Both the position numbers and the translations under genes were made by a program. This document shows positions 5,125 to 45,954 of a stretch of DNA of 64,000 nt, piece by piece. The stretch covers positions 94,612,001 to 94,676,000 of the forward strand of contig NC_067399.1 of the NCBI RefSeq assembly GCF_016432865.1, written 5' to 3'. Source of the stretch: Antechinus flavipes. Lineage: Eukaryota. Numbering within the stretch: the stretch's first letter is position 1; every line of letters begins with the position of its first letter. A model generated the notes under the pieces. It worked only from the letters and a program-made list of their open reading frames with translations, did no database searches and had not been told where the DNA came from.

Positions 5125-5471
5125 GGCACAAGAATTATTTATTTGTTTTTTGAAAATATTTATTTTACAAAATTAAATCTTTATTTTGCATATTTAAAAA
5201 TTGTATTTGAACTTGGTTATAGTACTAATATTTCAGTATTTTGTGGCTAATATTTTGATATCTATTTGAACTGGTAATTGACTTTTACCAAAAGGAAAAA
5301 CACCACAGACACTTTAGAGAATAATTTGAAAAAAGGTTTATTTGTGTTTGTATTAGAGTATAATGTAGTAGAAAGTTATCACTTAACCAATGAGATTCCC
5401 TGGCATCCAGAATCTAACTGAGAGAAGACAAAGATATTCTTGATGATAGAATAATGGCTCTTTCTTCTCAG

Positions 5472-5636
5472 TTTTTTGAAGCTGATGAACAACATAAACA
5501 CATGGAGGCAGAACTGAGAAGTAGATTGGAGACATTGGAGACAGAAGCAGCACAGCACCAAGCAGTCGTAGATGGTTTAACAAGAAAGTACATGGAAACC
5601 ATAGAAAAACTGCAAAATGACAAGGCCAAATTAGAA
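5472..5636 (+). CDS. PPP1R21: PPP1R21 exon 5 (FFEADEQHKHMEAELRSRLETLETEAAQHQAVVDGLTRKYMETIEKLQNDKAKLE)
   Basis: ttctcag| acceptor, |gtaagc donor; 165 nt, phase 0-0; lies within ORF 5454..5657. Confidence 0.96.
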
Positions 5637-5785
5637 GTAAGCTTTTCTCTTTGTTAAAAATGTCTCCTCCTGTGTGCTTTTGAAAAACAGGATGTTACTT
5701 AAAATGAGAATCTTATCTGAAGTACCTCTCATGTGCTTTTATTTACAAAATGAGGATTTTTGGCTTTTCTTTTTTTTAAATTCAG

Positions 5786-5844: not shown

Positions 5845-6305
5845 GTATGTTTAAGAGTGTTGAATGTCAGATTCAGAAAACTTGCTTTCTCTTGTCTTGG
5901 CTTTGCTATTAACTAGCTACATACAGACAGGTCATTTAATGTGTCTGTGTTTCAATTGCATTAGCTAACTTCTTATGTATCACTTATATCTACAATTTTG
6001 TAATCTTAAGCAATTTGTTCATATAATCCACATTCTAGTATCTTGCTTGAGGTTTTACTTTGTGTTTTGTCTTCGTAATTTCAAAATTTTATAGGTATAG
6101 CACCATCAGCTGCACTGTCAGGATTATATTAGTTCCTATTTTAAGTGACTTGAATCAAATGCCCTGCAGGTGATCTGTGAAGTTGACACAGAACTGAGTC
6201 TTGGCTATGATAATCTGAAAATGAAGTAACTTGCAGTTGATGTATATAAATATTTGGCTTAAAATTTGATTTAAAATGTTAAGGATCTTTTTTCCTTTCT
6301 TACAG

Positions 6306-6400
6306 TCAACTTCAGTTAAATAACCTTCATGAGGATTTGTCAAGTAGATTAGAGGAATCCTTGTCTATCATCAATGAAAAAGTTCCTTTTAATGACACAA
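6306..6400 (+). CDS. PPP1R21: PPP1R21 exon 7 (QLQLNNLHEDLSSRLEESLSIINEKVPFNDT)
   Basis: cttacag| acceptor, |gtaggt donor; 95 nt, phase 2-1. Confidence 0.95.
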
Positions 6401-6669
6401 GTAGGTATTATATAATTTTTCTCATTCACTGTTGGGACATGTCAGACTGAATGGTTCTTATTTATGTGGATAGAAGACTGATGTGGCCATTTTTGTTCTT
6501 TTGTTTGTGTCCAAAAGTGTAACTTTATATCCGATCACAAAATAGATATTGGTGACTTTAAGTTCTCTTATATTGTAGAACAGTACTGATTTTAGGGTTA
6601 AAATGATTCTCTGTTGGTTTATGTAAATGGAAATCTCACATGCTCTGTGTAACTCTCTTTGTCTTCTAG

Positions 6670-6722: not shown

Positions 6723-7239
6723 GTAACCCTCTAGTTACATTTTTTCTTTTTTAGTGATTATTCTTTTAAAAAGACCAAAGAATTGGTAGATCTTATTGAA
6801 GGGTCATTCAACAGATGATTTAACTTGTTTTTGCTTATGAAATTTGTACACTGTTATTGTTGGCAACCATCAGAAAAAAGGCCCATTTAAAATAGTTTTT
6901 CTATGTGGTATATCCTGAAGTTCACTAGTTCTTTAAGCATACCATCTGGAGCTTTTAGTTGGCTAATCTAACATTTTAAACTTAGTAAGTCATTTGTGTT
7001 GCAAATTATTTTTATTAATTGAAAGAGATGTATTTGCCAGTTTTTCCTATCTCTCTTGTTAGTTAGGCATGGATATTAAAGGTTGGGATGGGAGACTTTA
7101 GTTTAAATTAAGTAATTCTTTACTTAGAAATATTGAGATGGCTTTAAAAGGAGAAACAACTTCAAAAATATTATGAAATAGTAGTTTGGCAATTGCATTC
7201 TTTTGCCCCATTTTTAATTGTGTATTTATAATTTTAAAG

Positions 7240-7389
7240 CTGAAGATGCGGGATATTGCTGGGCAGGCCTTGGCTTTTATTCAAGATCTTGTGACAGCTC
7301 TTCTGAACTTTCATACCTACACAGAACAGAGAGTCCAAATTTTTCCCATTGATTCTGCCATTGATACTATATCACCATTAAATCAGAAG
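7240..7389 (+). CDS. PPP1R21: PPP1R21 exon 9 (LKMRDIAGQALAFIQDLVTALLNFHTYTEQRVQIFPIDSAIDTISPLNQK)
   Basis: ttttaaag| acceptor, |gtaaat donor; 150 nt; lies within ORF 7186..7425. Confidence 0.96.
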
Positions 7390-7469
7390 GTAAATTTTCT
7401 CAATTTTTTTTTCACTTTGGTTTGAACAAAAAATTTTACTCATCTGACACTTTTAATATTTAACACACT

Positions 7470-11530: not shown

Positions 11531-12514
11531 GGATTATGTAAATTTATTTTTACTGTCCTTTTAAAATATTAAAAACAACAACAACAACAACAACAAAATT
11601 GGTTGATGAAATTTCCAAGCATTAACAATCTTAGTCTCTTAGCTCTTGAAATCATAGATATGATCAAAATTAAAAACAAAATACAAGAAAAATACCTGAT
11701 ATCATTAAAGAAACATTAAGGTAGTGTGTAAAGAGGCCTCAGCCTCTGCAGCTATTTTCTCCTCTGTAAACTGAGGAAATAATACTTACTCTGGGATGTT
11801 TGGAGAAAACATTCATAAGCTTTGCAAAGTACTGTATGAGTCTGCATTATTATTGTTAAGATATTTTCTCTGCAAATGTTAAAATGAGGACGTTGTTGAC
11901 AATGTCAATCCAGAATGTAGTGGACATAGCTCATAGCATGTAATAAAGACTGATAAGGTTAGTCACTTGTTATTATTTTTTAAAGAGGGAGATATGCTGG
12001 TACTTTGACTCACTGTTACAGTGATTAATTGTTACCCACCCAACTCTTTTTTCCATGTTTATGTAGCACCTGTAAGGAAAGAATAGAGTTCTGTTTGAGG
12101 GTCCAACTTGCAGTGAATTTCCATTGTACTAGAATCTCAGAATTAAAAAGAGATGCTAGAGTTCAGCCAATCTCCCAACTAATATTTCCTTGAAGCAGAA
12201 AATTTTCCAATAAAATCTTGACCTTTTTGGTAAAAGACATATCTAGCTGCTTCACTTGGTGTTTTTCCTGCTGCTACCCATTCTTGCCTTGAAGGGAGAG
12301 TAAAGATTTTAGAACTAGCCAGAATAGGAGATAGAGAGGGGGGAAAGGGAGGAATCCCTTCTCATTTAAAGCCTGAATTTTCTTTCTAGGTAATTTATCC
12401 TCATTAAAACAATCTTAAGTATTTGTTATACAGTCCAGTAAGTTCACTCATGAACTTGTTGACATTTTTTGTTTTCAATAATTTAGCTCATAGGCCTTTT
12501 ATTTTTCTCTGCAG

Positions 12515-12616
12515 TTTTCACAGTACCTTCATGAAAATGCATCCTATGTTCGCCCTCTTGAGGAAGGAATGCTTCGCTTATTTGAGAGTATTACTGAAGA
12601 TACTGTGACAGTCTTG
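12515..12616 (+). CDS. PPP1R21: PPP1R21 exon 10 (FSQYLHENASYVRPLEEGMLRLFESITEDTVTVL)
   Basis: ctctgcag| acceptor, |gtattt donor; 102 nt. Confidence 0.95.
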
Positions 12617-12707
12617 GTATTTCCTTCCACTTATTATTTCTGGGAAATGGGAGTTCTTTTTTTGTGCAAATAATTCTATTAACCCTGTGAAAATTTTTCT
12701 TTTCTAG

Positions 12708-12796
12708 GAAACAACTGTGCAATTGAAAACTTTTTCAGAACATTTAACCTGCTATGTATCTTTTCTTAGGAAGATTCTTCCTTATCAGTTAAAAAG
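12708..12796 (+). CDS. PPP1R21: PPP1R21 exon 11 (ETTVQLKTFSEHLTCYVSFLRKILPYQLK[S])
   Basis: tttctag| acceptor after a 91-nt intron, |gtactt donor; 89 nt, phase 0-2. Confidence 0.95.
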
Positions 12797-15700
12797 GTAC
12801 TTTTCCCTTGAGGTCAGTTAACTTCATGAATTGCCTCCTTGTAGCCTGAACTCCTCAGAATATCATTGAAATACAAATGTTCATCTTGTGTCATATCCGA
12901 ACTTGTTTGATCTACTCCAGGTTTGAATTTTTATTGAGGAAAAAGAAGGAAGCATGGCTTGAGTAACAGTGATAACTCCCATCTATGAGTGCTTTATATT
13001 CCATAGAATTCTTTCTTCACAACAATCTTTTGAGATATTTAGCTCAAACATCCCCATTTTACTAGGAGGAAACTAAGACTTAGAGAGTGACTAACTGAGG
13101 AAAAGGATATGAAGTCATTTCATTCTCCAGATAAATTTAAATTCTGAGTAAACTTGATGCAAAGTCTTGAATTATAATTTCTCCAGCTGTTCTTTTCAGT
13201 GACTTGTGATACATAGAAAAAAATTGAAAAAACATGATAATTACCATTCCTAAACAATACATTTATGAAAAATGGATGATTTTTCTTTGTTGCTTTTTAG
13301 TATTTTGAGATATATGATATACTGACATACTAATATTAAGCCAAGGCCCTCATGTGAAATTTACATGAAAATGTTTTTTGTAAATCCCTATTTTAAAATT
13401 TGAATTTATAAATAGATTTTGGGTATAAATTTTGTATGCTAGTAATGATAGTGAAGTAGTAATTCTTTGAGTTTACATGTAGGTGCTAGTCAGAATTTGC
13501 ACAATTTAAAAAAAATTTTTATATGATATCCTAATATTTAAAATGGTACCACTTTTAGAGTATTTTTAACAGTGAGGAATAAGTTTAAAACTATTAGATT
13601 GTTGTAAAAGTCTTTAATATTCTGTTTTAAAATTTCTGGGGAAGGAGAGGAAAATAATGTGAAAAACAAGATACTTGCTTGTCCTGCCTGCTGACTAAAA
13701 CTTTAAAAAAGATAAAATTCAGAATTGGCACACTTTTCCTTTTTTTCTGCAAATCATAGTTCTTCCTAAATAGTGTCTTTGGGCTTAATTTTTCAGGGGA
13801 AGAGGAGGGAGGGGAAAACTAAAATAAAATTGAAACTTTGTGCCATAATAATATTATTAAGGTATTAGTGCATAAGATATATTGAATTTTTTTCCTTGTG
13901 AAAACAATAAGCTTTCTCAGCTTCTTTGTTCCTATTAGTGCCAACACTGTTTATGATTATGTCAAAAATTATTGTGAATTCTGATTTGCCTAGCTCTTCT
14001 CCTCACCTTAAGATTTATAAGTCTTGTCATTGTAACCACCAGGAAATAACAAGGCTGGAGCATAATAGAAAGAGGAACAATGGTTCATATGTTACAAAAT
14101 AAAATTCAGAAAATATTTAAATGTGGCTCTCCTTATCTATAGTAAGAAAATGCAGCTAATTTTAATTGGCAAATCTTCAGTTTTGTATTATTTGTGATAG
14201 AAATAGTAAATTTTAAGTGTAAGTATTCTCCTCTAATCAGACCTATTTTTTGTTTTTAAATTAAATTAAAAATGGGTAAGGGCTAGGTTATTCTTTAATT
14301 TTTTTGTTAAAATAATTTTTTGTAAATAACCTGTGGATCTTCAAGTTATTCTTATAAGAAGATATTTTGGGATCAAGAAATTGTGACCTCCACTACTTCT
14401 TCCCCCTCTTTCAATTAAATTTTATTGAGGTATGATTTTCTAACAACTTGCATAATTTTTTAAAAAGAAATAAACAATTTCAAACTCTAGAATTTAGCTA
14501 GTATTCAAGTTGTATTTTGACGAATACATTTTTTTATTCAGTGTTAAATTCTCATTGCACAGAGTTGCGTTAAATATCCCTTATATATGCTGAACTTGTT
14601 TTTCAAGGGGCTTTCTCTCAATTTTTGACTAATCTTTGAGAGATGCTGGGGGCAAATAAAAACCTAACAGTATAATAGTAGTAGTAGCAGCAGTGGAGAA
14701 GGCAATTTTTTCTTCCTCTTGTGTTTAAGGCTTGTTATGTCCAAGGAGAACATCTGTGAGATTTAACATTATACAAGCTTACATCTTCCCATTTCCTTAA
14801 GAGGCAAGAAAATTAGAAGAACTTTTGAAAGAAAAACATGAGTTATATGAATGTCAAGATAAGAGAGGAAGTTGTCCTAACAGTACTAAGTGGTCTTTCT
14901 TGCCTGTGACTAGAGTGAGTCTTTGTTCATTACTATTGCCATTCCTGAGTACAAGAAAAGGAGATCATGAGACTTAGTAATTAGGCTCTTTAAAACATAT
15001 ACAAATCTGGCAAAAATCCTGTTAACTTTACTGTACCAGAATTGTATTCCCTCTCTCTGCTCCTACCCTGTAGCTTAGCATCCTGGGGCTTGCCCTTACC
15101 CCCTCAAAAAAACCCCAATAAAAACTAAAAACAAAGAAAAATCCTTTAAGTGAAAGCAGAAAGAGGGATGCAAGGAGAACCCCCATTGCTGTCAGACCAG
15201 AGCTTGGATTGAGACCCCTCCCTCTACTAACTCACTTCCTTGTCCAGTCCTGTGTGTCTGTCTTGTATCCGTCTGCACTTGGACACTCCATGTCTATTGC
15301 TGGTCCCCACCTGCTACCTGTCCTTCCAGCATCTGTGGCCCCCATCTTTCTGCTCCCCCCTTCCCATGTAATTTTCCTTTTGATTCTGGCTAGGCTCTTT
15401 TGTTCTCATTGCTCTTCCCAGCCCCAATGTGTACCAGGTCCTCCACATGTATACTGTTCTTTCCTTCTTTTTTCCCTCCCTCATGTCCTCGCACAGATTT
15501 TTTATTATTTAAAAATCACTTTAGTAGAGGTCTGTGGAATGGACCAGTTATGCACAGCAAGAGCTGTCTATACCTGTTAAAAGGGGAAACCTAGTTAAAA
15601 TGTTACAGAAGTTGAATCAAGTTGAGACTTTATGCAGTTTGAATAGCATACAGCCCACATTTGAGATACTTCTAGCAGCAGAATAATCTACTGCCTAGTC

Positions 15701-16499
15701 CTTAGGAAAAATGCTTAGTGATGTATATTAGACAATACACCCATTCTCAAGCATACTTTTTTGAATAGTTATCCTTCCTTGAATACATGTCTTTTAAACC
15801 TTCCATTCTTATTGATCTGGACTAAAAGTAAAGGATGATGCCAAGCTTCTTGAGGATATCTAACCTTAGCAATCAGGAAATAGGAACTCTGATACTTAAA
15901 ATTCAAACTGTATTTACATTTTGTCTTAGAATCTCTGCATGGTGTTCACTAAATTCACATTTTCTTTTTATTGGAATGTAGATGTTTATGTTGACAACAT
16001 ATAATTTTGTATATAGATGATTCTAAACCCTGCTCATCATTGTTGCCCATTCTTACAATATTGAGCTCTCTTAAATATTCAAAGTTTATAAACTACCTGT
16101 TGCATTTGAACAAAGGCAGTTTTGAGTATGCCTGCTGAAAGATAGTTTTCCTTGCTCTGTATTTAAAAACCAAAGAAAACATTCCTTCATATTCTGGTCC
16201 ATCTGGACTGGCCCCTGTAATTACTTACTTATTGGTGCTTAAAATAAAATCCAAAAGAAGCTTTTCCTTAAAACAAATTGTTAAAAATGAAAAACCCTCT
16301 TTGGGCAGTGGGGGCTAGAAGTAGAAAGAAGCCACTCATTGATTTATGTTAAGAGATTTAATTCTTCTGTAAGGAAGGCCAGTAGTAGCACATTTCTACA
16401 TCTACCAAAGTCTTACATATGACAGCATTTAATAAGTTTTGTTCAGTAAAAATGAGTACTTTGTAATATATACTTAGTTTAAAATAAGATCACTTGTTT

Positions 16500-16844
16500 T
16501 GGCAAAATGGTATGATTTATCAAAGCAAGTGATTTTCATGTCTAAAAGAATTGGCCCTATAAGCAATAATCTAGAAAAATACATGCAATAATGAGTATAC
16601 ATAAAATGGTAGCCAGAATTTTAGAGACAGTCTCATAGATTTTTAAAAAATCCAGACATGATATAAAAATGTGCAAGAATGAATAGTAATCTGAGGTAAG
16701 CATTAAAAATTTAAATGACAGCTATGTAGGAAAACTCCAGACACTTTTAAAAATATTTAAAATTTACCCATTCTCAATATTTCATACCACTTTTATATAA
16801 AGAGTGTTCTTGTATGTTTTTGTATGTGTACCTGAATGGCCACA

Positions 16845-16882
<38 letters not shown>

Positions 16883-17705
16883 AATATAATGTATACCGAT
16901 TTACAAGAGATTCAAAAAACACAAAAATCCCCAGAGAACAGGTATACCTCAACTAATTTCAAAACCCATCAAGCCACAAAAGGAAGTCATTGTCTTTGGA
17001 TCAGCTCTTTATTTCACTAAGAGGAATGTTGACCTCTTCCTTGGCTTGCTTGTTAGGAAACAGTTATTCTGAGAATTCAGGATGGCCTTCCTCCTGAGCA
17101 ACTTAGTGGGTATAAAATAAAGCAAAAACTTGGGCCTTACGCATTTCTTCCCAACTGCACATGTTAGGTTTGAAATCATTGCATTTATCCAGAATCTTCC
17201 TTCACTATTGTGGCAATATGTTGTGTAGTATGCTGAGCCAAACCCTTTCTCTTGATGCATGACAGCAGCAGACAAATCATCAATAAAGTAGTCTGGTCCA
17301 AGGAAATTTATTGACTGTCAGTAGGGTTCCAACTTTAGGCATTGATTAAAACCAAAAGATACCCCCATTTACTTTTCTGTGATTATTTCCTGACCACCTG
17401 AATCATTCTAAGTAGTCTAAGAATCTGTGGTAGTCAACACACTAAAAGCTGTTTCTGGGCCTCCGTGAGTTATATTGGTTTTAAAGAAAATTTCCTGTCT
17501 TTTGTGTTAATACTGGTCATACAAAGATATTGCCTTCTAAAGCTTCAGTTTCCATGAGGTTGGCCAACATTTCAGTAACCAAGTAGGGATCCTGAGAAGT
17601 CATTTCTTTTCCATTACTAAAATTTTCTGGAAATTTTAGTGACAGGTCTCTGAAAGATTCTGTGATATTTGATTTATCATCACATGCAATACATAACAAG
17701 ATACA
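16500..17705 (-). pseudogene. USP44: USP44 processed pseudogene, 5'-truncated (C-terminal USP domain plus part of 3' UTR), antisense in PPP1R21 intron 11
   Basis: The minus strand reads [24 protein letters not shown]...[21 protein letters not shown] / LTEAQKQLLVC*LPQILRL / FRWSG / FIDDLSAAVMHQEKGFGSAYYTTYCHNSEGRFW / ...SEIKS*. This is collinear with USP44 ([24 protein letters not shown]...LTEAQKQL...FRWSG...[30 protein letters not shown], recalled). It has stops and frameshifts and no introns. The stop is at 17001-17003. The 3' boundary is approximate. Confidence 0.9.
16841..16880. repeat. (CA)n microsatellite within the USP44 retrocopy 3' UTR
   Basis: Read directly; one T interruption. Confidence 0.95.
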
Positions 17706-18684
17706 GGCTGAGCCTCCATCTTGCAAGCTTATTAGCTAGCAGGTGTGATGGCAGCCATAAAACTACTTGTTTTGGTCTGAATGTCCTAAGATTCAGTAGA
17801 ATTACATGTATGACACTTGCCTTTTCCAGAACATTTCAGGAAACTTGAACTTATATCAAAAACAATGGAATTTAGAACTTTTGAAATTAGACTTATATAT
17901 AAAGTATCATAGTATTGTACTTTTGTTTCTATTTTGTTATGTATTTACTTTGCTTATACTTGGAAGAGATCTGCCTCAGAATCTCTTGAAAAGGACTTAA
18001 GACTAAAAAAGCCCTTTCCTGAGTTTTTTTTTTTTCCTAGAATATCGTCCATAAACTCTTAGACTTATCTAATAGGACTAATCATTTTAAGTAAACCTTT
18101 ACTATATTTGTTCAGATGAGTTAAGTGGCCAAAAACAAAAAACAAAACAAATCTCAAAACCAAAAAAAAACCAAAACCTCATCACACAAAAGTTGGGTGT
18201 CCTAGGGATTGAGTATGTATGAAATTTAAATGAAGTTATGCAATTAAGTCATGAGGGGGAAAAATAGAGAAAATCCCTAAGAAGTCTTTCCAAAGATAAT
18301 TTCCAGAGCTTTCTAGCTATGCTAAAAGGTTCCACTTTTTTCTCCCCTGAGGTAAATCTTTCTCTAGATAACTTGTTCAGTTTTAAAACTGAATTGTAGC
18401 TTATATGTTAGGAATTAATTTTTAATATAAGAATTCAGATTTATTCCTTTCTACTGCTATTTTTTTTGAAAGATGTAGTGATAACTTATAGTGAAATGCT
18501 TATTTTTTTCATTGATATTGGTTTCTTAATGAGCCTCTTTGTACTGGTTTGTATAGGTAACAATAGTATCTACTATTGTTTTTATGGATTCCCTTGTAGG
18601 AATTGTCTTTGAAATGATTTTTTTAAATCCCAGAGTATTACTGTGGGGGCTAGGGAGAGCTAGTACCTCTTTAGAAGAGAGTAC

Positions 18685-18747
18685 CACACGTGTGTGGGTG
18701 TGTGTGTGTGTGTGTGTGTGTGTGTACACACATACACATACGCGCGT
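18685..18747. repeat. (GT)n-(AC)n-(CG)3 alternating purine-pyrimidine tract
   Basis: Read directly. Confidence 0.92.
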
Positions 18748-19021
18748 AAGCATATTTTTATTCTTGGTCTCAGTGATTCACTGGTAGCTACAGCAAAAGA
18801 ATAAGCAGCAATTTTGTGTATCATTGGGAAAAAAGGAGACCTTTATAAGACTAAACTCTTATTTCTTTTAAATCTCAGAAGCCAAGGGTAATCATTTTAG
18901 GACATTTATTTTCCACTTAGCAATATATAACTATTTCAGAACCTAGGTAGTAATAAAAGCTTTCTATGGGTAGTTTAAAATCATTCAGGGTGCTCACTTT
19001 AAAAAATTTACCTATTCCTAG

Positions 19022-19158
19022 TTTGGAGGAAGAATGTGAATCTTCTGTTTGCACATCTGCATTAAGAGCCAGAAATCTAGAATTATACAGTGATGTGAAA
19101 AAGATGACTGCTGTGTTTGAGAAGCTCCAGACTTATATTGCTCTTCTTGCATTGCCAA
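19022..19158 (+). CDS. PPP1R21: PPP1R21 exon 12 (LEEECESSVCTSALRARNLELYSDVKKMTAVFEKLQTYIALLALP)
   Basis: ttcctag| acceptor, |gtaagt donor; 137 nt, phase 2-1; lies within ORF 18966..19235. Confidence 0.96.
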
Positions 19159-24764: not shown

Positions 24765-24917
24765 ATCGCATCTTTCTTCAGCAACAATGTTGACTACTTT
24801 ATTGCTTCACTGAGCTATGGGCCTAAGGAGGCCAATGGATTCATCAGTCCTCTCTCAGCAGAATGTATGCTGCAATACAAGCAAAAAGCTGCTGCTTATA
24901 TGAAGTCTTTGAAGAAG
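24765..24917 (+). CDS. PPP1R21: PPP1R21 exon 15 (IASFFSNNVDYFIASLSYGPKEANGFISPLSAECMLQYKQKAAAYMKSLKK)
   Basis: tgtttag| acceptor, |gttaga donor; 153 nt. Confidence 0.96.
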
Positions 24918-25628
24918 GTTAGAGAAGACCACAGAGACAGATGGCACAGCCTTGGCAATGGCCTAGAGTTTTATTAGAGCTCCTTTTATTGTTAGCCTAT
25001 CATTGAAAGAGTCCATCTAGTCCTACCCTCTCATTTTAGAGTAAGGAAAACTGAAGCGCAAGAAGTTTAGTGATTTTCCTGTAGTCACACAGGAGTTATA
25101 TATGAGAGGCAGGATTTTAAACTCAGTTCCTCTAACTCCAGAGCTAGTGCTCTTTTCACATTCCCATGGCCCCTTCCAGATAAAGAAACTAAAATTCAGA
25201 AGGAAACTAAAATTACTTGCTGCTATTCTTATAGTTAGGAAGTGTTAGACCTTAGATTCTAACCCTGATCCTGAGACTCCAAGACCAGTACCATTTCTAC
25301 CAGATTATTATTTAAAATCAAAGGGGGGAAAAAAGAATATATTTCCAGAATGTTTCAGGAACATTTATGTTCTATATCATTTAGATTCAACACATTTCTT
25401 TTTGATAGTGGGTCAGGATAAGGACAGATTCAATTTGACAAAGTCTTAACGAGTAAATTAACCCCTTTAACTTCAAGAAGTACCTGACATTCTCAACCCC
25501 AGAATGGGTGACCTGAAATTATATAACATTTAGTACCCCTGTTTGTACATGTAGCATGAGAGAGACTAGAAAAAATGCTTCTCAACTTCTCCTTCTGCCC
25601 TTACTTGTTGGTGATGACTTTACTGCAG

Positions 25629-25721
25629 CCCTGTTTGGAGTCGGTGCCTTATGAAGAAGCTCTGGCCAATCGTCGTATCCTTTTGAGTTCCACGGAAAGT
25701 AGAGAAGGTCTTGCACAACAG
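25629..25721 (+). CDS. PPP1R21: PPP1R21 exon 16 (PCLESVPYEEALANRRILLSSTESREGLAQQ)
   Basis: tactgcag| acceptor, |gtatgg donor; 93 nt. Confidence 0.96.
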
Positions 25722-25832
25722 GTATGGAATCTCTAACATTAGTGATAGGAAAATCAAAGTATTGATTTTATACAGTGACCTTTTAAAAGAGTATATAGAC
25801 ATATAGGCATGTTTAATGTTATAAGCGGGAGG

Positions 25833-30792: not shown

Positions 30793-31323
30793 ATCTTCCC
30801 AGAATCCTCCCAGAATTCTTAAAAGTAATTTCTAAATCTATAATAAATTTAGTTTTTGTTTACCACTCAAAATTAGACATTTAAAAAGAAAATTCAGAAA
30901 TTGTTTTTTTTTCCAGTTCTTTTGGGGCTCTGGGAAAGATGATATTGTGGAGCAGTAAGACAGGCAGTTGTTGCTTTTCTTTTGGATTTTGGCCAACTTT
31001 TGAGCCATATTTTAGGCTTTTACATTTCATATAACAAAGCAAACTTAGCTAGAACTCACGTTTCAAGGGTTGTGACCTGGTTAAAAAATTAATTTGAAAA
31101 AATAAGTGGAAAAACTTCTATTAAGAGCAAAAATTTAAGTAGCAGTTTGAAAAAAAAAAAGCAATTATATTTATTTCAATGGTTTGTCCAGTAAGTCTGA
31201 TTAGTTTTCTAAATATATTTGTATCTTTTGAAATAGCTTTGATTTGATCACATAAAGTCTCTAGATCTTTCAGTTTTGTTTTCATTTCATATTCAAATTA
31301 GTAATTATCTTTCAATTTTGAAG

Positions 31324-31572
31324 GTCCAGCAGAGTTTAGAGAAGATTGCCAAACTGGAGCAGGAGAAGGAACATTGGATGCTGGAAGCCCAGCTAGCCAA
31401 AATCAAGTTGGAAAAGGAAAACCAGAGAATGGCAGATAAGGGGAAAAATGCCAGTGGAGCCCCGCTGGTTCAGAATACCCAGGAAAATCCTGTTGTGGTG
31501 AATGCCACTGTACAAGATCAGGAAGAACCATCTGACAGGACTTGGCAAGAACCTGTTCAGAGTACCAGTCTG
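31324..31572 (+). CDS. PPP1R21: PPP1R21 exon 17 (VQQSLEKIAKLEQEKEHWMLEAQLAKIKLEKENQR...EPVQSTSL)
   Basis: ttttgaag| acceptor, |gtaagg donor; 249 nt; lies within ORF 31276..31596. Confidence 0.96.
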
Positions 31573-31989
31573 GTAAGGTTATTCCTTCTGTTTTGATTCT
31601 TTGATTCCCTTGTTCTTTTTATTCTCAGTAACAAAGGTCCCACCTGCCTTCCCAAGATGAACATAAAAAACCCATGCAACATACATCATGTTCTTGAAGT
31701 GAAACTCCATCTTTCCTGCAGAATTCAACCTGCTAATCAGAATGCTTTTCAAAGGGGAACAGAAAGGCATCATTATGGTGTAGTGGGCAGAGGGCAGGAT
31801 GGGAAGTAGGGAGACCATGATTTGTATTCTGCCTCCCACACTTACTAGGTGTGTGGCCTGGGGCAAGTCACCTCTGAGCTTTAGTTTCCGGATTTTTATG
31901 ATGCTGTTTTTGTGTGATGTCATCAATGAGGGTATTCTCTATTTGTGCAAGCTGTAAATATTCTTTTGTATCTGTGTATAAGATTTCTA

Positions 31990-41604: not shown

Positions 41605-41721
41605 GTTCCAGATGTTGAATCCCGTGAGGATTTAATAAAAAATCATTATATGGCAAGGATAGTGGAGCTTACATCCCAGCTTCAGTTGGCTGATAGCAAA
41701 TCGGTGCATTTTCATGCTGAG
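41605..41721 (+). CDS. PPP1R21: PPP1R21 exon 19 (VPDVESREDLIKNHYMARIVELTSQLQLADSKSVHFHAE)
   Basis: cctccag| acceptor, |gtaagt donor; 117 nt. Confidence 0.96.
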
Positions 41722-42271
41722 GTAAGTTGCTCATGATGGGATCTTTTGTTATTTCCAAGTCTTATAGGATTTTGCTTTTTCAGACACAGTTAATGAGTGA
41801 GACATTAAAGTGAAAAGTTGTATATTCTACAATGACTTAGATATATTATAGTTTGTGACTGCCTATCTCACATTCCAAACAGCTAATTCTGTACTTCAGG
41901 TTAGGGACTATCTTTGGTTTTATGATTTAAGAGACTGATATATCCTCAACTTTTTCAATGAACATTTTGCAGTTTTATAATGTGAATAATTTAGCATTAC
42001 AAATTATATATAGATGGATAACAATGGAAAGACTAGCAGTGATTTTTATAGGACATTTATGTAGACTGTTTTCAAAACAAAATCAAAACACTTTAAAAGA
42101 AGCTTAGGTTTTTATTTACCATTAAAACTAAGAAAACACCTAGAAATGTGGAACCTGTGAAAAATGTGGAATTATGGACATTTAACATAATAATTCCAGG
42201 AAATATTAGGAAAAATCTAGTCCTTAAAAATGTTTTAATTCCTTTCTTTTTAACAAAAATAAAAGTGTACA

Positions 42272-45140: not shown

Positions 45141-45258
45141 GCTTTATTTGAAAATAGCTTTTGCATTTGAATTTTTGTTGTCAAATTTTGCCTTAAATTG
45201 AAATGAATTACAGAGAACCTTTTTTCTTGTGCTGACATAATGTTTTCTAAATTGACAG

Positions 45259-45357
45259 TGCCGAGCACTCTCCAAAAGATTATCTTTAGCAGAAAAGTCT
45301 AAAGAATCATTGAATGAAGAAATGAAATTAGCTAGTCAGAACCTTAGCAGACTGCAG
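45259..45357 (+). CDS. PPP1R21: PPP1R21 exon 20 (CRALSKRLSLAEKSKESLNEEMKLASQNLSRLQ)
   Basis: attgacag| acceptor, |gtaagt donor; 99 nt. Confidence 0.96.
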
Positions 45358-45477
45358 GTAAGTTCAGAAATGTTAATAAAGTAATTTAAATCTATTTTCT
45401 ATTGGGTTTTCTTGGGCAGAAAAATCAATTTTTTGTTATCAAGAATGGTGACAGTGCTTTTAAAAGTACTTATTTAG

Positions 45478-45954
45478 AGCAGGACCAGGAGATCATTATA
45501 TACTTCAACAACAATACTAGATGATGATCAATTCTGATGGACCTGGCCATCTTCAGCAATGAGATGAACCAGATCAGTTCCAATGGAGCAATAATGAACT
45601 GAACCAGCTACACCCAGCGAAAGAACTCTGGGAGATGACTAAGAACCATTACATTGAATTCCCAATCCCTATATTTTTGTGCCCGCCTGCATTTTTGATT
45701 TCCTTCAGAGGCTAATTGTACAATACTTCAGAGTCCGATTCTTTTTGTACAGCAATATAACGGTTTGGACATATATAATTATTTTGTATTTAATTTATAC
45801 TTTAACGTATTTAACATGTATTGATCATCCTGTCATCTAGGGGAGGGGTGGGGGGAAGGAGGGGAAAAATTGGAACAAAAGGTTTGGCAATTGTCAATGC
45901 TGTAAAATTACCCATGCATATAACTTGTAAATAAAAAGCTATTAAAATTTTTTA
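45478..45954 (+). mobile_element. Young 5'-truncated L1 3' end, sense, 120 nt downstream of exon 20
   Basis: 16-bp TSD aaaagtacttatttag at 45462-45477 and 45955-45970; AATAAA at 45930. Confidence 0.9.

What the first reader, a model, noticed from the sequence alone, without database searches (positions are those of the whole stretch)
16500..17705. Hidden USP44 retrocopy antisense inside PPP1R21 intron 11
Seen: two small ORFs (17517..17726 and 17009..17275, both minus) and the frame-broken sequence between them form one collinear ~700-nt USP catalytic-domain C-terminus: CxxC, DLSL.FP, LTEAQKQL, FRWSG (17388-17402), the His box, then a stop at 17001-17003 followed by TCCAAAGACAATG. Established knowledge (recalled): this best fits USP44 rather than USP49 (LVTEMLA, LTEAQKQL, NSEG, terminal ..EI.S*), and the span crosses about three USP44 exon junctions with no introns, so it is a processed pseudogene. 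It is disabled: no Cys box, the catalytic His of SGHY reads TAC/Tyr (17228-17230), and there are multiple stops and frameshifts. Inference: its presence implies germline or early-embryo USP44 expression in this lineage. Every PPP1R21 pre-mRNA would also carry ~1.2 kb of antisense-USP44 sequence, a possible endo-siRNA or regulatory source.
Basis: partly seen in the sequence, partly recalled or inferred. Interest (0 to 1): 0.78.

Follow-up and report, generated by a model that had tools for sequence, protein, structure and literature searches.

The report
Ancient dead USP44 retrocopy in intron
This is a long-dead, intron-free copy of the last four coding exons and the whole 3'UTR of the deubiquitinase gene USP44, lying backwards inside an intron of PPP1R21 in a marsupial. 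It is real and almost three times longer than first noted, but it is an ordinary molecular fossil with no sign of a function.

Summary
On the minus strand, 17697..14395 (3.3 kb, not 1.2 kb) is a processed pseudogene of USP44.

- **Match to the parent.** It aligns base for base with coding exons 2-5 of the USP44 genes of devil, antechinus, koala and Dromiciops.
- **No introns.** The three exon junctions are contiguous in the window, while the parents have 1-4 kb introns there.
- **3' end.** It runs through the whole ~1.9 kb 3'UTR to the parental AATAAA (14426-14421). An all-purine tail remnant follows.
- **USP44, not USP49.** Bit scores are 255-261 for marsupial USP44 against 198 for USP49.
- **Dead.** Exon 1 with the Cys box is absent. 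The catalytic His codon reads TAC (17230-17228). Four frameshifts and five in-frame stops break the frame, and substitutions are spread almost evenly over codon positions.
- **Host.** It lies antisense in a 6.2 kb PPP1R21 intron (12797-19021), between exons that match human residues 338-366 and 367-413. The label "intron 11" was not verified.
- **Age.** The terminal branch is ~0.31 substitutions per site. The copy branches inside marsupials but outside four Australidelphian parents. Two related species share it at the same site.
- **siRNA idea.** It is weak: identity to the antechinus USP44 mRNA is 71.5%, and 8 of 1414 21-mers match perfectly.
- **One oddity.** The 5' end falls exactly on the exon 1/2 junction.

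The parts
14395..17697 (-). Whole USP44 processed pseudogene (coding exons 2-5, full 3'UTR and tail remnant), 3303 nt
   Evidence: Collinear blastn blocks to the USP44 loci of devil L001, koala L002, Dromiciops L003 and antechinus L004; MAFFT alignment.
17505..17697 (-). Part derived from coding exon 2 (devil aa 479-544). It carries CIAC, DLSL.FP and LVTEMLA. Homology starts at the first base of the exon.
   Evidence: 80.3% identity to devil, koala and antechinus exon 2. Exon model 17435-17633 in L001. No similarity to the end of exon 1 or to the intron upstream of 17697.
17398..17504 (-). Part derived from coding exon 3 (LTEAQKQL); in-frame stops at 17472-17470 and 17436-17434
   Evidence: 79% identity. 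The junctions with exons 2 and 4 are contiguous here, against 1.4 kb and 3.9 kb introns in devil. Stops.
17197..17397 (-). Part derived from coding exon 4 (rest of FRWSG motif, His box); His to Tyr at 17230-17228; stop at 17320-17318; frameshift near 17369
17001..17196 (-). Coding part of the last exon with the native stop TGA at 17003-17001; frameshift near 17185; stops at 17105-17103 and 17066-17064
   Evidence: The first 3'UTR bases after the stop are almost identical to those of the parents.
14413..17000 (-). Sequence derived from the 3'UTR, about 70% identical to marsupial USP44 3'UTRs
   Evidence: blastn blocks 17196-16532, 16230-15843 and 14891-14414 to L001; the same pattern in L002-L004; K2P 0.40.
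14999..15570 (-). 572-nt stretch absent from all parental 3'UTRs (a later insertion of unknown class, partly G/A-rich)
   Evidence: Retro-only block in the pairwise alignment. No similarity elsewhere in the window or in the loci.
14421..14426 (-). Poly(A) signal AATAAA inherited from the USP44 mRNA
   Evidence: Same context (CCTCAATAAAA) as at L001 26250, L002 28607, L003 27110, L004 22683 and in platypus L005.
14395..14412 (-). Purine-only tract, read as the decayed poly(A) tail. Similarity to the parental genomic sequence stops here, about 9-14 nt after AATAAA.
   Evidence: Direct reading. That it was once a poly(A) tail is inference.
12708..12796 (+). PPP1R21 exon just upstream of the host intron (matches human residues 338-366)
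   Evidence: PDB chain 7nd2_A, E 8e-11; AG acceptor and GT donor read.
12797..19021 (+). Host intron of PPP1R21 (GT..AG, 6225 nt); the relic fills 53% of it
19022..19158 (+). PPP1R21 exon just downstream of the host intron (matches human residues 367-413)
   Evidence: PDB chain 7nd2_A, E 4e-21; splice sites read.

Best explanation
A spliced, polyadenylated USP44 mRNA in the germ line of an early marsupial was reverse-transcribed (presumably by LINE-1 machinery) and inserted, backwards, into an intron of PPP1R21. The copy holds only coding exons 2-5 and the 3'UTR. It had no start codon, no zinc-finger or Cys-box region and no promoter, so it was dead on arrival. It has since drifted neutrally, collecting frameshifts, stops, the His-to-Tyr change, a microsatellite and a 572-nt insertion. 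Today it is inert intron filler that is transcribed only as part of the PPP1R21 pre-mRNA and spliced out. The antisense orientation keeps its AATAAA off the host's sense strand, which is the usual reason such inserts survive in introns. Shown here: identity, missing introns, poly(A) end, disablement, host intron, and sharing with related species. Inferred: LINE-1 mediation, the exact age, and the absence of function.
For: The parent is USP44: a phmmer search of a 72-aa piece against 1.84 billion proteins has USP44-named proteins and unnamed fragments at the top (E 8e-14) and USP49 lower (4.5e-6). The X-joined read-through scores 255-261 bits against 12 marsupial USP44 proteins, 241 against chicken USP44 and 198 against bird USP49. 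It is processed: three exon junctions (about 17505|17504, 17398|17397, 17197|17196) are contiguous, while devil, koala, Dromiciops, antechinus, platypus and seal all have introns there. The 3' end is that of the mRNA: homology runs through ~1.9 kb of 3'UTR to the conserved AATAAA, leaves the parental genomic sequence 9-14 nt later, and is followed by an 18-nt purine-only tract. Decay is neutral: differences from the parental consensus are 24.5/16.1/24.9% at codon positions 1/2/3, against 3.6/2.7/17.9% among the parents, and 0 of 12 parental CpGs are kept. There are four frameshifts and five stops. Exon 1 is absent from the whole 64 kb. It is old and fixed: the terminal branch is 0.31 substitutions per site, inside marsupials (support 100/99) and outside the four Australidelphian parents (90/99). 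It shares dasyurid-derived sites only at the background rate, 5 of 29. Contigs of two other coded species, 3.1% and 8.5% diverged, carry it and bridge its 5' junction. The host is PPP1R21: exons on the + strand on both sides match the solved protein.
Against: No target-site duplication is recognisable; the best candidate is no better than shuffles (P 0.21). The tail remnant is short and inferred. The 5' end coincides exactly with an exon boundary, which simple random 5' truncation makes unlikely (rough estimate ~1%). Absence of function is argued from decay, not shown; no usable RNA data from the same species were available. The host species (antechinus, a dasyurid) comes from other agents' notes and was not verified here, and the 'older than the Australidelphian orders' dating depends on it. 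The AU test does not formally reject a join with the dasyurid lineage (p 0.086).
Confidence: 0.93

Rival explanations
1. The relic is a regulatory element. Because it is antisense to USP44 and is transcribed within every PPP1R21 pre-mRNA, it pairs with USP44 mRNA and yields endo-siRNAs or otherwise tunes USP44.
For: The geometry is right: the + strand intron RNA is complementary to USP44 mRNA over about 2.5 kb of alignable sequence. Pseudogene-derived endo-siRNAs are known from mouse oocytes (established knowledge).
Against: Identity to the antechinus USP44 mRNA (the presumed own-species parent) is only 71.5%. The longest exact match is 28 nt of T-rich low complexity, then 20 nt; only 8 of 1414 ungapped 21-mers match perfectly and 35 have one mismatch. 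The decay pattern is neutral with no conserved block. No RNA contig over the relic in the one RNA run laid (another species, weak evidence). An intronic RNA is nuclear and short-lived.
Confidence: 0.03
2. The copy records an alternative USP44 transcript. The source mRNA lacked the large coding exon 1 (internal or alternative promoter, or an alternative first exon spliced to exon 2), so the 5' end at the exon 1/2 junction is original and not a truncation. Some sequence just upstream of 17697 might then be a lost alternative exon.
For: Homology begins at the very first base of exon 2 (17697), with nothing from the end of exon 1 or from the intron. Alternative USP44 promoters are reported in human stem cells and testis (reference 30 cited in PMC5927659). 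A Sminthopsis isoform X2 is annotated.
Against: Sensitive blastn of 17698-18130 against three marsupial USP44 loci, including introns and 3-6 kb upstream, found nothing consistent. After this much neutral decay a short non-coding exon would be undetectable, so the test has little power. A coincidence at about 1% is not extreme for a post hoc observation.
Confidence: 0.1
3. It derives from USP49 or another USP paralogue, or from a DNA-level duplication of the USP44 locus that later lost its introns.
For: USP49 also aligns over the catalytic part (198 bits).
Against: USP44 scores higher throughout. About 1.75 kb of non-coding 3'UTR aligns with marsupial USP44 3'UTRs down to the same poly(A) signal. 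The exact loss of three introns together with an end at the poly(A) site is the signature of an mRNA intermediate.
Confidence: 0.01

Closest known systems
Processed pseudogenes (LINE-1-mediated retrocopies) of mammalian genes, dead on arrival
   Same: No introns, an end at the parent's poly(A) site with a tail remnant, 5' incomplete, no promoter, neutral decay, location unlinked to the parent, antisense inside a host intron.
   Different: No target-site duplication is recognisable any more. The 5' end sits exactly on an exon junction. The copy is unusually old for one that still aligns over its whole 3'UTR.
USP44 (ubiquitin carboxyl-terminal hydrolase 44, peptidase family C19), marsupial orthologues XP_012406030 (devil) and XP_051856864 (antechinus)
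   Same: Collinear with aa 479-717 and the full 3'UTR. It shares marsupial-type residues in the variable C-terminal tail.
   Different: It lacks aa 1-478 (zf-UBP and the Cys box), has the catalytic His replaced by Tyr, and carries nine frame-breaking lesions. It is not an enzyme gene.
Pseudogene-derived endo-siRNA sources in mouse oocytes
   Same: A pseudogene sequence that can be transcribed antisense to its parent mRNA.
   Different: Those cases rest on long, near-perfect duplexes. Here complementarity is 71.5% with almost no perfect 21-mers, and no small-RNA evidence exists.

Membership tests
Processed pseudogene / retrocopy | Parental introns are precisely absent | tested here: met
   Three junctions are contiguous in the window, against introns of 0.9-3.9 kb in devil and conserved exon sizes (199/109/206/~206 nt) in four marsupials and platypus (196/109/206/200 in seal).
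Processed pseudogene / retrocopy | Ends at the parental polyadenylation site with a poly(A) tail | tested here: met
   AATAAA at 14426-14421 sits in the same conserved context as the parents. Similarity to the parental genomic DNA stops 9-14 nt later and an 18-nt purine-only tract follows. Reading that tract as the tail is inference.
Processed pseudogene / retrocopy | Flanking target-site duplication | tested here: inconclusive
   The best flank match (a 9/10-nt match with one gap) is no better than shuffles, P 0.21. Loss is expected at ~0.3 substitutions per site. The 19-nt repeat 16484/17757 lies inside the element and is chance.
Processed pseudogene / retrocopy | Lies away from the parent locus | tested here: met
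   The parent lies next to a Peptidase_M24 gene. The copy lies inside PPP1R21.
USP44 orthology group (against USP49) | Closer to USP44 than to USP49 in the protein, and homologous in the non-coding UTR | tested here: met
   255-261 bits against 198 bits; names; 3'UTR alignment; tree placement inside marsupial USP44 with support 100/99.
Active C19 ubiquitin-specific protease | Cys box and His box with the catalytic Cys and His, in an open reading frame | tested here: not met
   Exon 1 is absent from the whole window; His to Tyr at 17230-17228; four frameshifts and five stops; no Pfam UCH hit on any piece.
Endo-siRNA-generating antisense pseudogene | Long near-perfect complementarity to the parent mRNA | tested here: not met
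   71.5% identity to the antechinus USP44 mRNA; 8 of 1414 21-mers match perfectly.
Endo-siRNA-generating antisense pseudogene | 21-23-nt small RNAs mapping to it | not testable with these tools
   No small-RNA library of this species was on offer. The only RNA run laid was contigs of another species.

The most novel reading that the evidence does not exclude
The relic is a roughly 65-100-million-year-old snapshot of an alternative germ-line USP44 transcript of early marsupials that began at, or spliced into, coding exon 2 without the large first coding exon. It would encode at most a catalytically headless C-terminal fragment. That would explain why its 5' end falls exactly on the exon 1/2 junction.
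Probability: 0.1. Interest if true: 0.3.

Novelty: new member of a known kind. Interest (0 to 1): 0.12.

Why it matters
It matters little beyond annotation. It should be masked or labelled as a USP44 processed pseudogene so that its two small ORFs are not called as genes, and so that reads from it are not confused with USP44. It is a usable rare genomic change: presence or absence at this exact site in the PPP1R21 intron of koala, wombat, Dromiciops, bilby and opossums would be a clean phylogenetic marker for early marsupial branching. It could also calibrate the neutral rate in dasyurids. The exact-junction 5' end is a small curiosity about ancestral USP44 transcripts.

Tried and rejected
- **Single pieces.** Pfam and PDB searches with single pieces gave no USP hit; the pieces are too short and decayed.
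- **Word and Atlas searches.** A word-index search with the 72-aa piece found nothing, because of the length window. The ESM Atlas gave nothing on the 57-aa His-box piece.
- **Direct repeat D5.** It was rejected because the 3'UTR homology continues 2 kb beyond it.
- **Second TSD candidate.** The candidate at 17718-17709 against 14392-14384 is not significant.
- **5' flank.** I looked for exon 1, for intron 1 or for an alternative 5' exon upstream of 17697. There was no signal, and Rfam and tRNA scans of the flanks gave only microsatellite-type sub-threshold miRNA hits.
- **Parental loci.** Opossum, Gracilinanus, wallaby, possum and bilby loci had no DNA served, so no didelphid DNA could be put in the tree.
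- **Host species.** I tried to confirm it from shared repeats. The result is indecisive: the best hit is an 88% L1 fragment shared with devil.
- **Steps kept out of the search tools.** PPP1R21 exons and the USP44 pieces were searched one by one by reference.
- **Human material.** No human contig was fetched or used. Human appears only as the PDB chain 7nd2_A hit and as unused rows.

Full report
**What is there**

The single pieces hit nothing in Pfam or the PDB. An exhaustive phmmer search with the 72-aa piece (17735-17520) found 35 proteins. The best named ones are USP44 (whale shark E 7.6e-14; a duck protein whose close relatives are named USP44). USP49 scores lower, at 4.5e-6.

A word search seeded with the duck protein returned named USP44 proteins from many vertebrates, including Tasmanian devil P0112. 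Its 90% cluster holds 12 marsupial species.

**Protein-level check**

- tblastn with devil USP44 gives one collinear match, aa 481-717 to 17693..17004, ending on the stop codon (E 9e-26).
- A frameshift-aware alignment finds four real frameshifts (near 17519, 17403, 17369 and 17185). It finds five in-frame stops (17472-70, 17436-34, 17320-18, 17105-03 and 17066-64).
- The catalytic His codon of the His box is TAC at 17230-17228, and the native stop is TGA at 17003-17001.
- With X at each break, used in the sandbox only, the read-through scores 255-261 bits against 12 marsupial USP44 proteins. It scores 248 against platypus, 241 against chicken USP44, 234 against a sloth and 198 against bird USP49.

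**DNA-level check and true extent**

I fetched the USP44 loci of devil (L001), koala (L002), Dromiciops (L003), antechinus (L004), platypus (L005) and harbour seal (L006). I derived their exon models, which are conserved: coding exons of 1434 (1422-1425 outside marsupials), 199 (196 in seal), 109, 206 and about 200 nt.

The window matches exon 2 (17694-17512, 80%), exon 3 (17511-17396, 79%), exon 4 (17400-17198, 73%) and the last exon. It then continues into the 3'UTR (17196-16532, 16230-15843 and 14891-14414, 64-72%) in all four marsupials.

The three exon junctions are contiguous in the window, whereas devil has introns of 1.4, 3.9 and 0.9 kb there.

The 3'UTR homology ends at the conserved poly(A) signal: AATAAA at 14426-14421, in the same CCTCAATAAAA context as the four marsupial parents and platypus. 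Nine to fourteen bases later the window leaves the parental genomic sequence and shows an 18-nt purine-only tract (14412-14395), which I read as the decayed tail.

The element is therefore 17697..14395, or 3303 nt. It includes a (TG)n microsatellite and a 572-nt block (15570-14999) that the parents lack.

**The 5' end**

With a 2-nt deletion allowed, homology begins at 17697, which is the first base of coding exon 2 (aa 479). Upstream there is no similarity to the end of exon 1 (37-39% identity in a forced alignment), to the intron, or to anything else in three marsupial USP44 loci (L001-L003). Exon 1 is nowhere in the 64 kb. No target-site duplication is detectable. The exact coincidence with a junction is unexplained: it could be chance truncation, an alternative source transcript or a later rearrangement.

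**Host gene**

ORFs on the + strand match the solved human PPP1R21 chain 7nd2_A:

| Window (+ strand) | 7nd2_A residues | E-value |
|---|---|---|
| 12494-12670 | 302-338 | 1.5e-15 |
| 12708-12796 | 338-366 | 8e-11 |
| 19022-19158 | 367-413 | 4e-21 |
| about 31320-31580 | 568-651 | 3e-25 |

Fragments named PPP1R21 place further exons at 25611-25724, 41605-41724 and 45241-45366. Other ORFs at 5.4, 6.3, 7.3 and 24.8 kb look like further exons but were checked only by eye.

The relic lies antisense in the GT..AG intron 12797-19021 and fills 53% of it. I could not verify that this is intron 11.

**Decay and age**

Differences from the parental consensus are 24.5/16.1/24.9% at codon positions 1/2/3. 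Among the parents the figures are 3.6/2.7/17.9%. None of 12 parental CpGs survives. Almost all of the divergence is therefore neutral, which fits a copy that was dead from the start.

In a GTR+G tree of exons 2-5 plus the 3'UTR, the relic joins the marsupials (support 100/99) but sits outside devil + antechinus + koala + Dromiciops (90/99). Its terminal branch is 0.31, against 0.11-0.12 for the parents measured from the same node.

Holding it with the dasyurids costs 8.2 lnL units (AU p 0.086), so that join is disfavoured but not rejected.

Site counts agree with the tree:

- It shares dasyurid-derived states at 5 of 29 sites. That is the same rate as chance matches to koala-private sites (17/88) or Dromiciops-private sites (21/129).
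- It carries 56 of 99 states that the four parents share against platypus + seal, and it keeps the outgroup state at 27.

Variable C-terminal residues point the same way: they are marsupial-type, but without the Australidelphian, dasyurid or diprotodont changes.

Notes from other agents name the genome as Antechinus flavipes, a dasyurid (not verified here). If that is right, the insertion predates the split of the Australasian orders. With calibrations recalled from memory (therian split ~160 Mya, Australidelphian crown ~65 Mya), its position on the stem suggests roughly 65-100 My.

Independently of that, contigs from two other coded species carry the relic. One is 3.1% diverged (16893-18170). 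The other is 8.5% diverged (15636-17613, and 17592-18364 bridging the 5' junction).

**Function**

Nothing suggests one. Identity to the antechinus USP44 mRNA is 71.5%. The longest exact match is 28 nt of T-rich sequence, and 8 of 1414 ungapped 21-mers match perfectly. The RNA run laid came from another species and was held as contigs. It showed no contig on the relic except a 49-nt piece that probably comes from the parent gene.

Literature searches found no report of a USP44 retrocopy. One review cites USP44 expression from alternative promoters in human pluripotent cells and testis, which fits a gene able to leave germ-line retrocopies.

**Verdict**

This is a correct and careful first-stage observation of an ordinary object: an ancient, dead, 5'-incomplete processed pseudogene of USP44 lying antisense in a PPP1R21 intron. 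It is 3.3 kb long rather than 1.2 kb. The regulatory speculation is not supported. The only mildly unusual points are its age and the exact-junction 5' end.

Noticed in passing
window 5418-5654, 6283-6447, 7177-7422, 12494-12670, 12708-12796, 19022-19158, 24765-24974, 25611-25724, ~31320-31580, 41605-41724, 45241-45366 (+): A run of PPP1R21 coding exons on the + strand. Seven were confirmed against PDB 7nd2_A or PPP1R21 fragments; the ones at 5.4, 6.3, 7.3 and 24.8 kb were recognised only by eye from their ORF translations.
   Followed up: partly
window 14999-15570: A 572-nt block inside the relic's 3'UTR that no parental USP44 3'UTR has. It is partly G/A-rich, has no similarity elsewhere in the window or in six USP44 loci, and carries the 123-aa chance ORF 15209-15580. 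It is probably a later insertion of an unclassified element.
   Followed up: partly
L001 26200-26300, L002 28560-28650, L003 27060-27150, L004 ~22680, L005 ~18197: The end of the USP44 3'UTR (the poly(A) signal context and the GU-rich stretch behind it) is almost identical in devil, koala and Dromiciops. The CCTCAATAAAA core is also present in antechinus and platypus, so this 3'UTR is under constraint.
   Followed up: no
window 18131-18181: An A-rich low-complexity tract that collects contigs at 40-60 times the local depth in all four runs laid. It looks like a very common repeat tail and lies 430 nt from the relic's 5' end.
   Followed up: no
window 16831-16880 and 18690-18725: (CA)n/(TG)n microsatellites that give sub-threshold Rfam hits to the TG-repeat miRNA families mir-297 and mir-466. 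These are not genes.
   Followed up: yes
window 45477-45947: An L1-like fragment 88% identical to two copies in the devil USP44 locus (L001 356-829 and 16430-16903). This was the highest long repeat match to any fetched marsupial locus and is weakly in line with a dasyurid host.
   Followed up: partly
window 17535-17583: A 49-nt stretch of the exon-2-derived part is matched, with 7 differences, by separate larger contigs in three runs, including a 237-nt RNA contig. These are most likely the parental USP44 exon of those species, not the relic.
   Followed up: no
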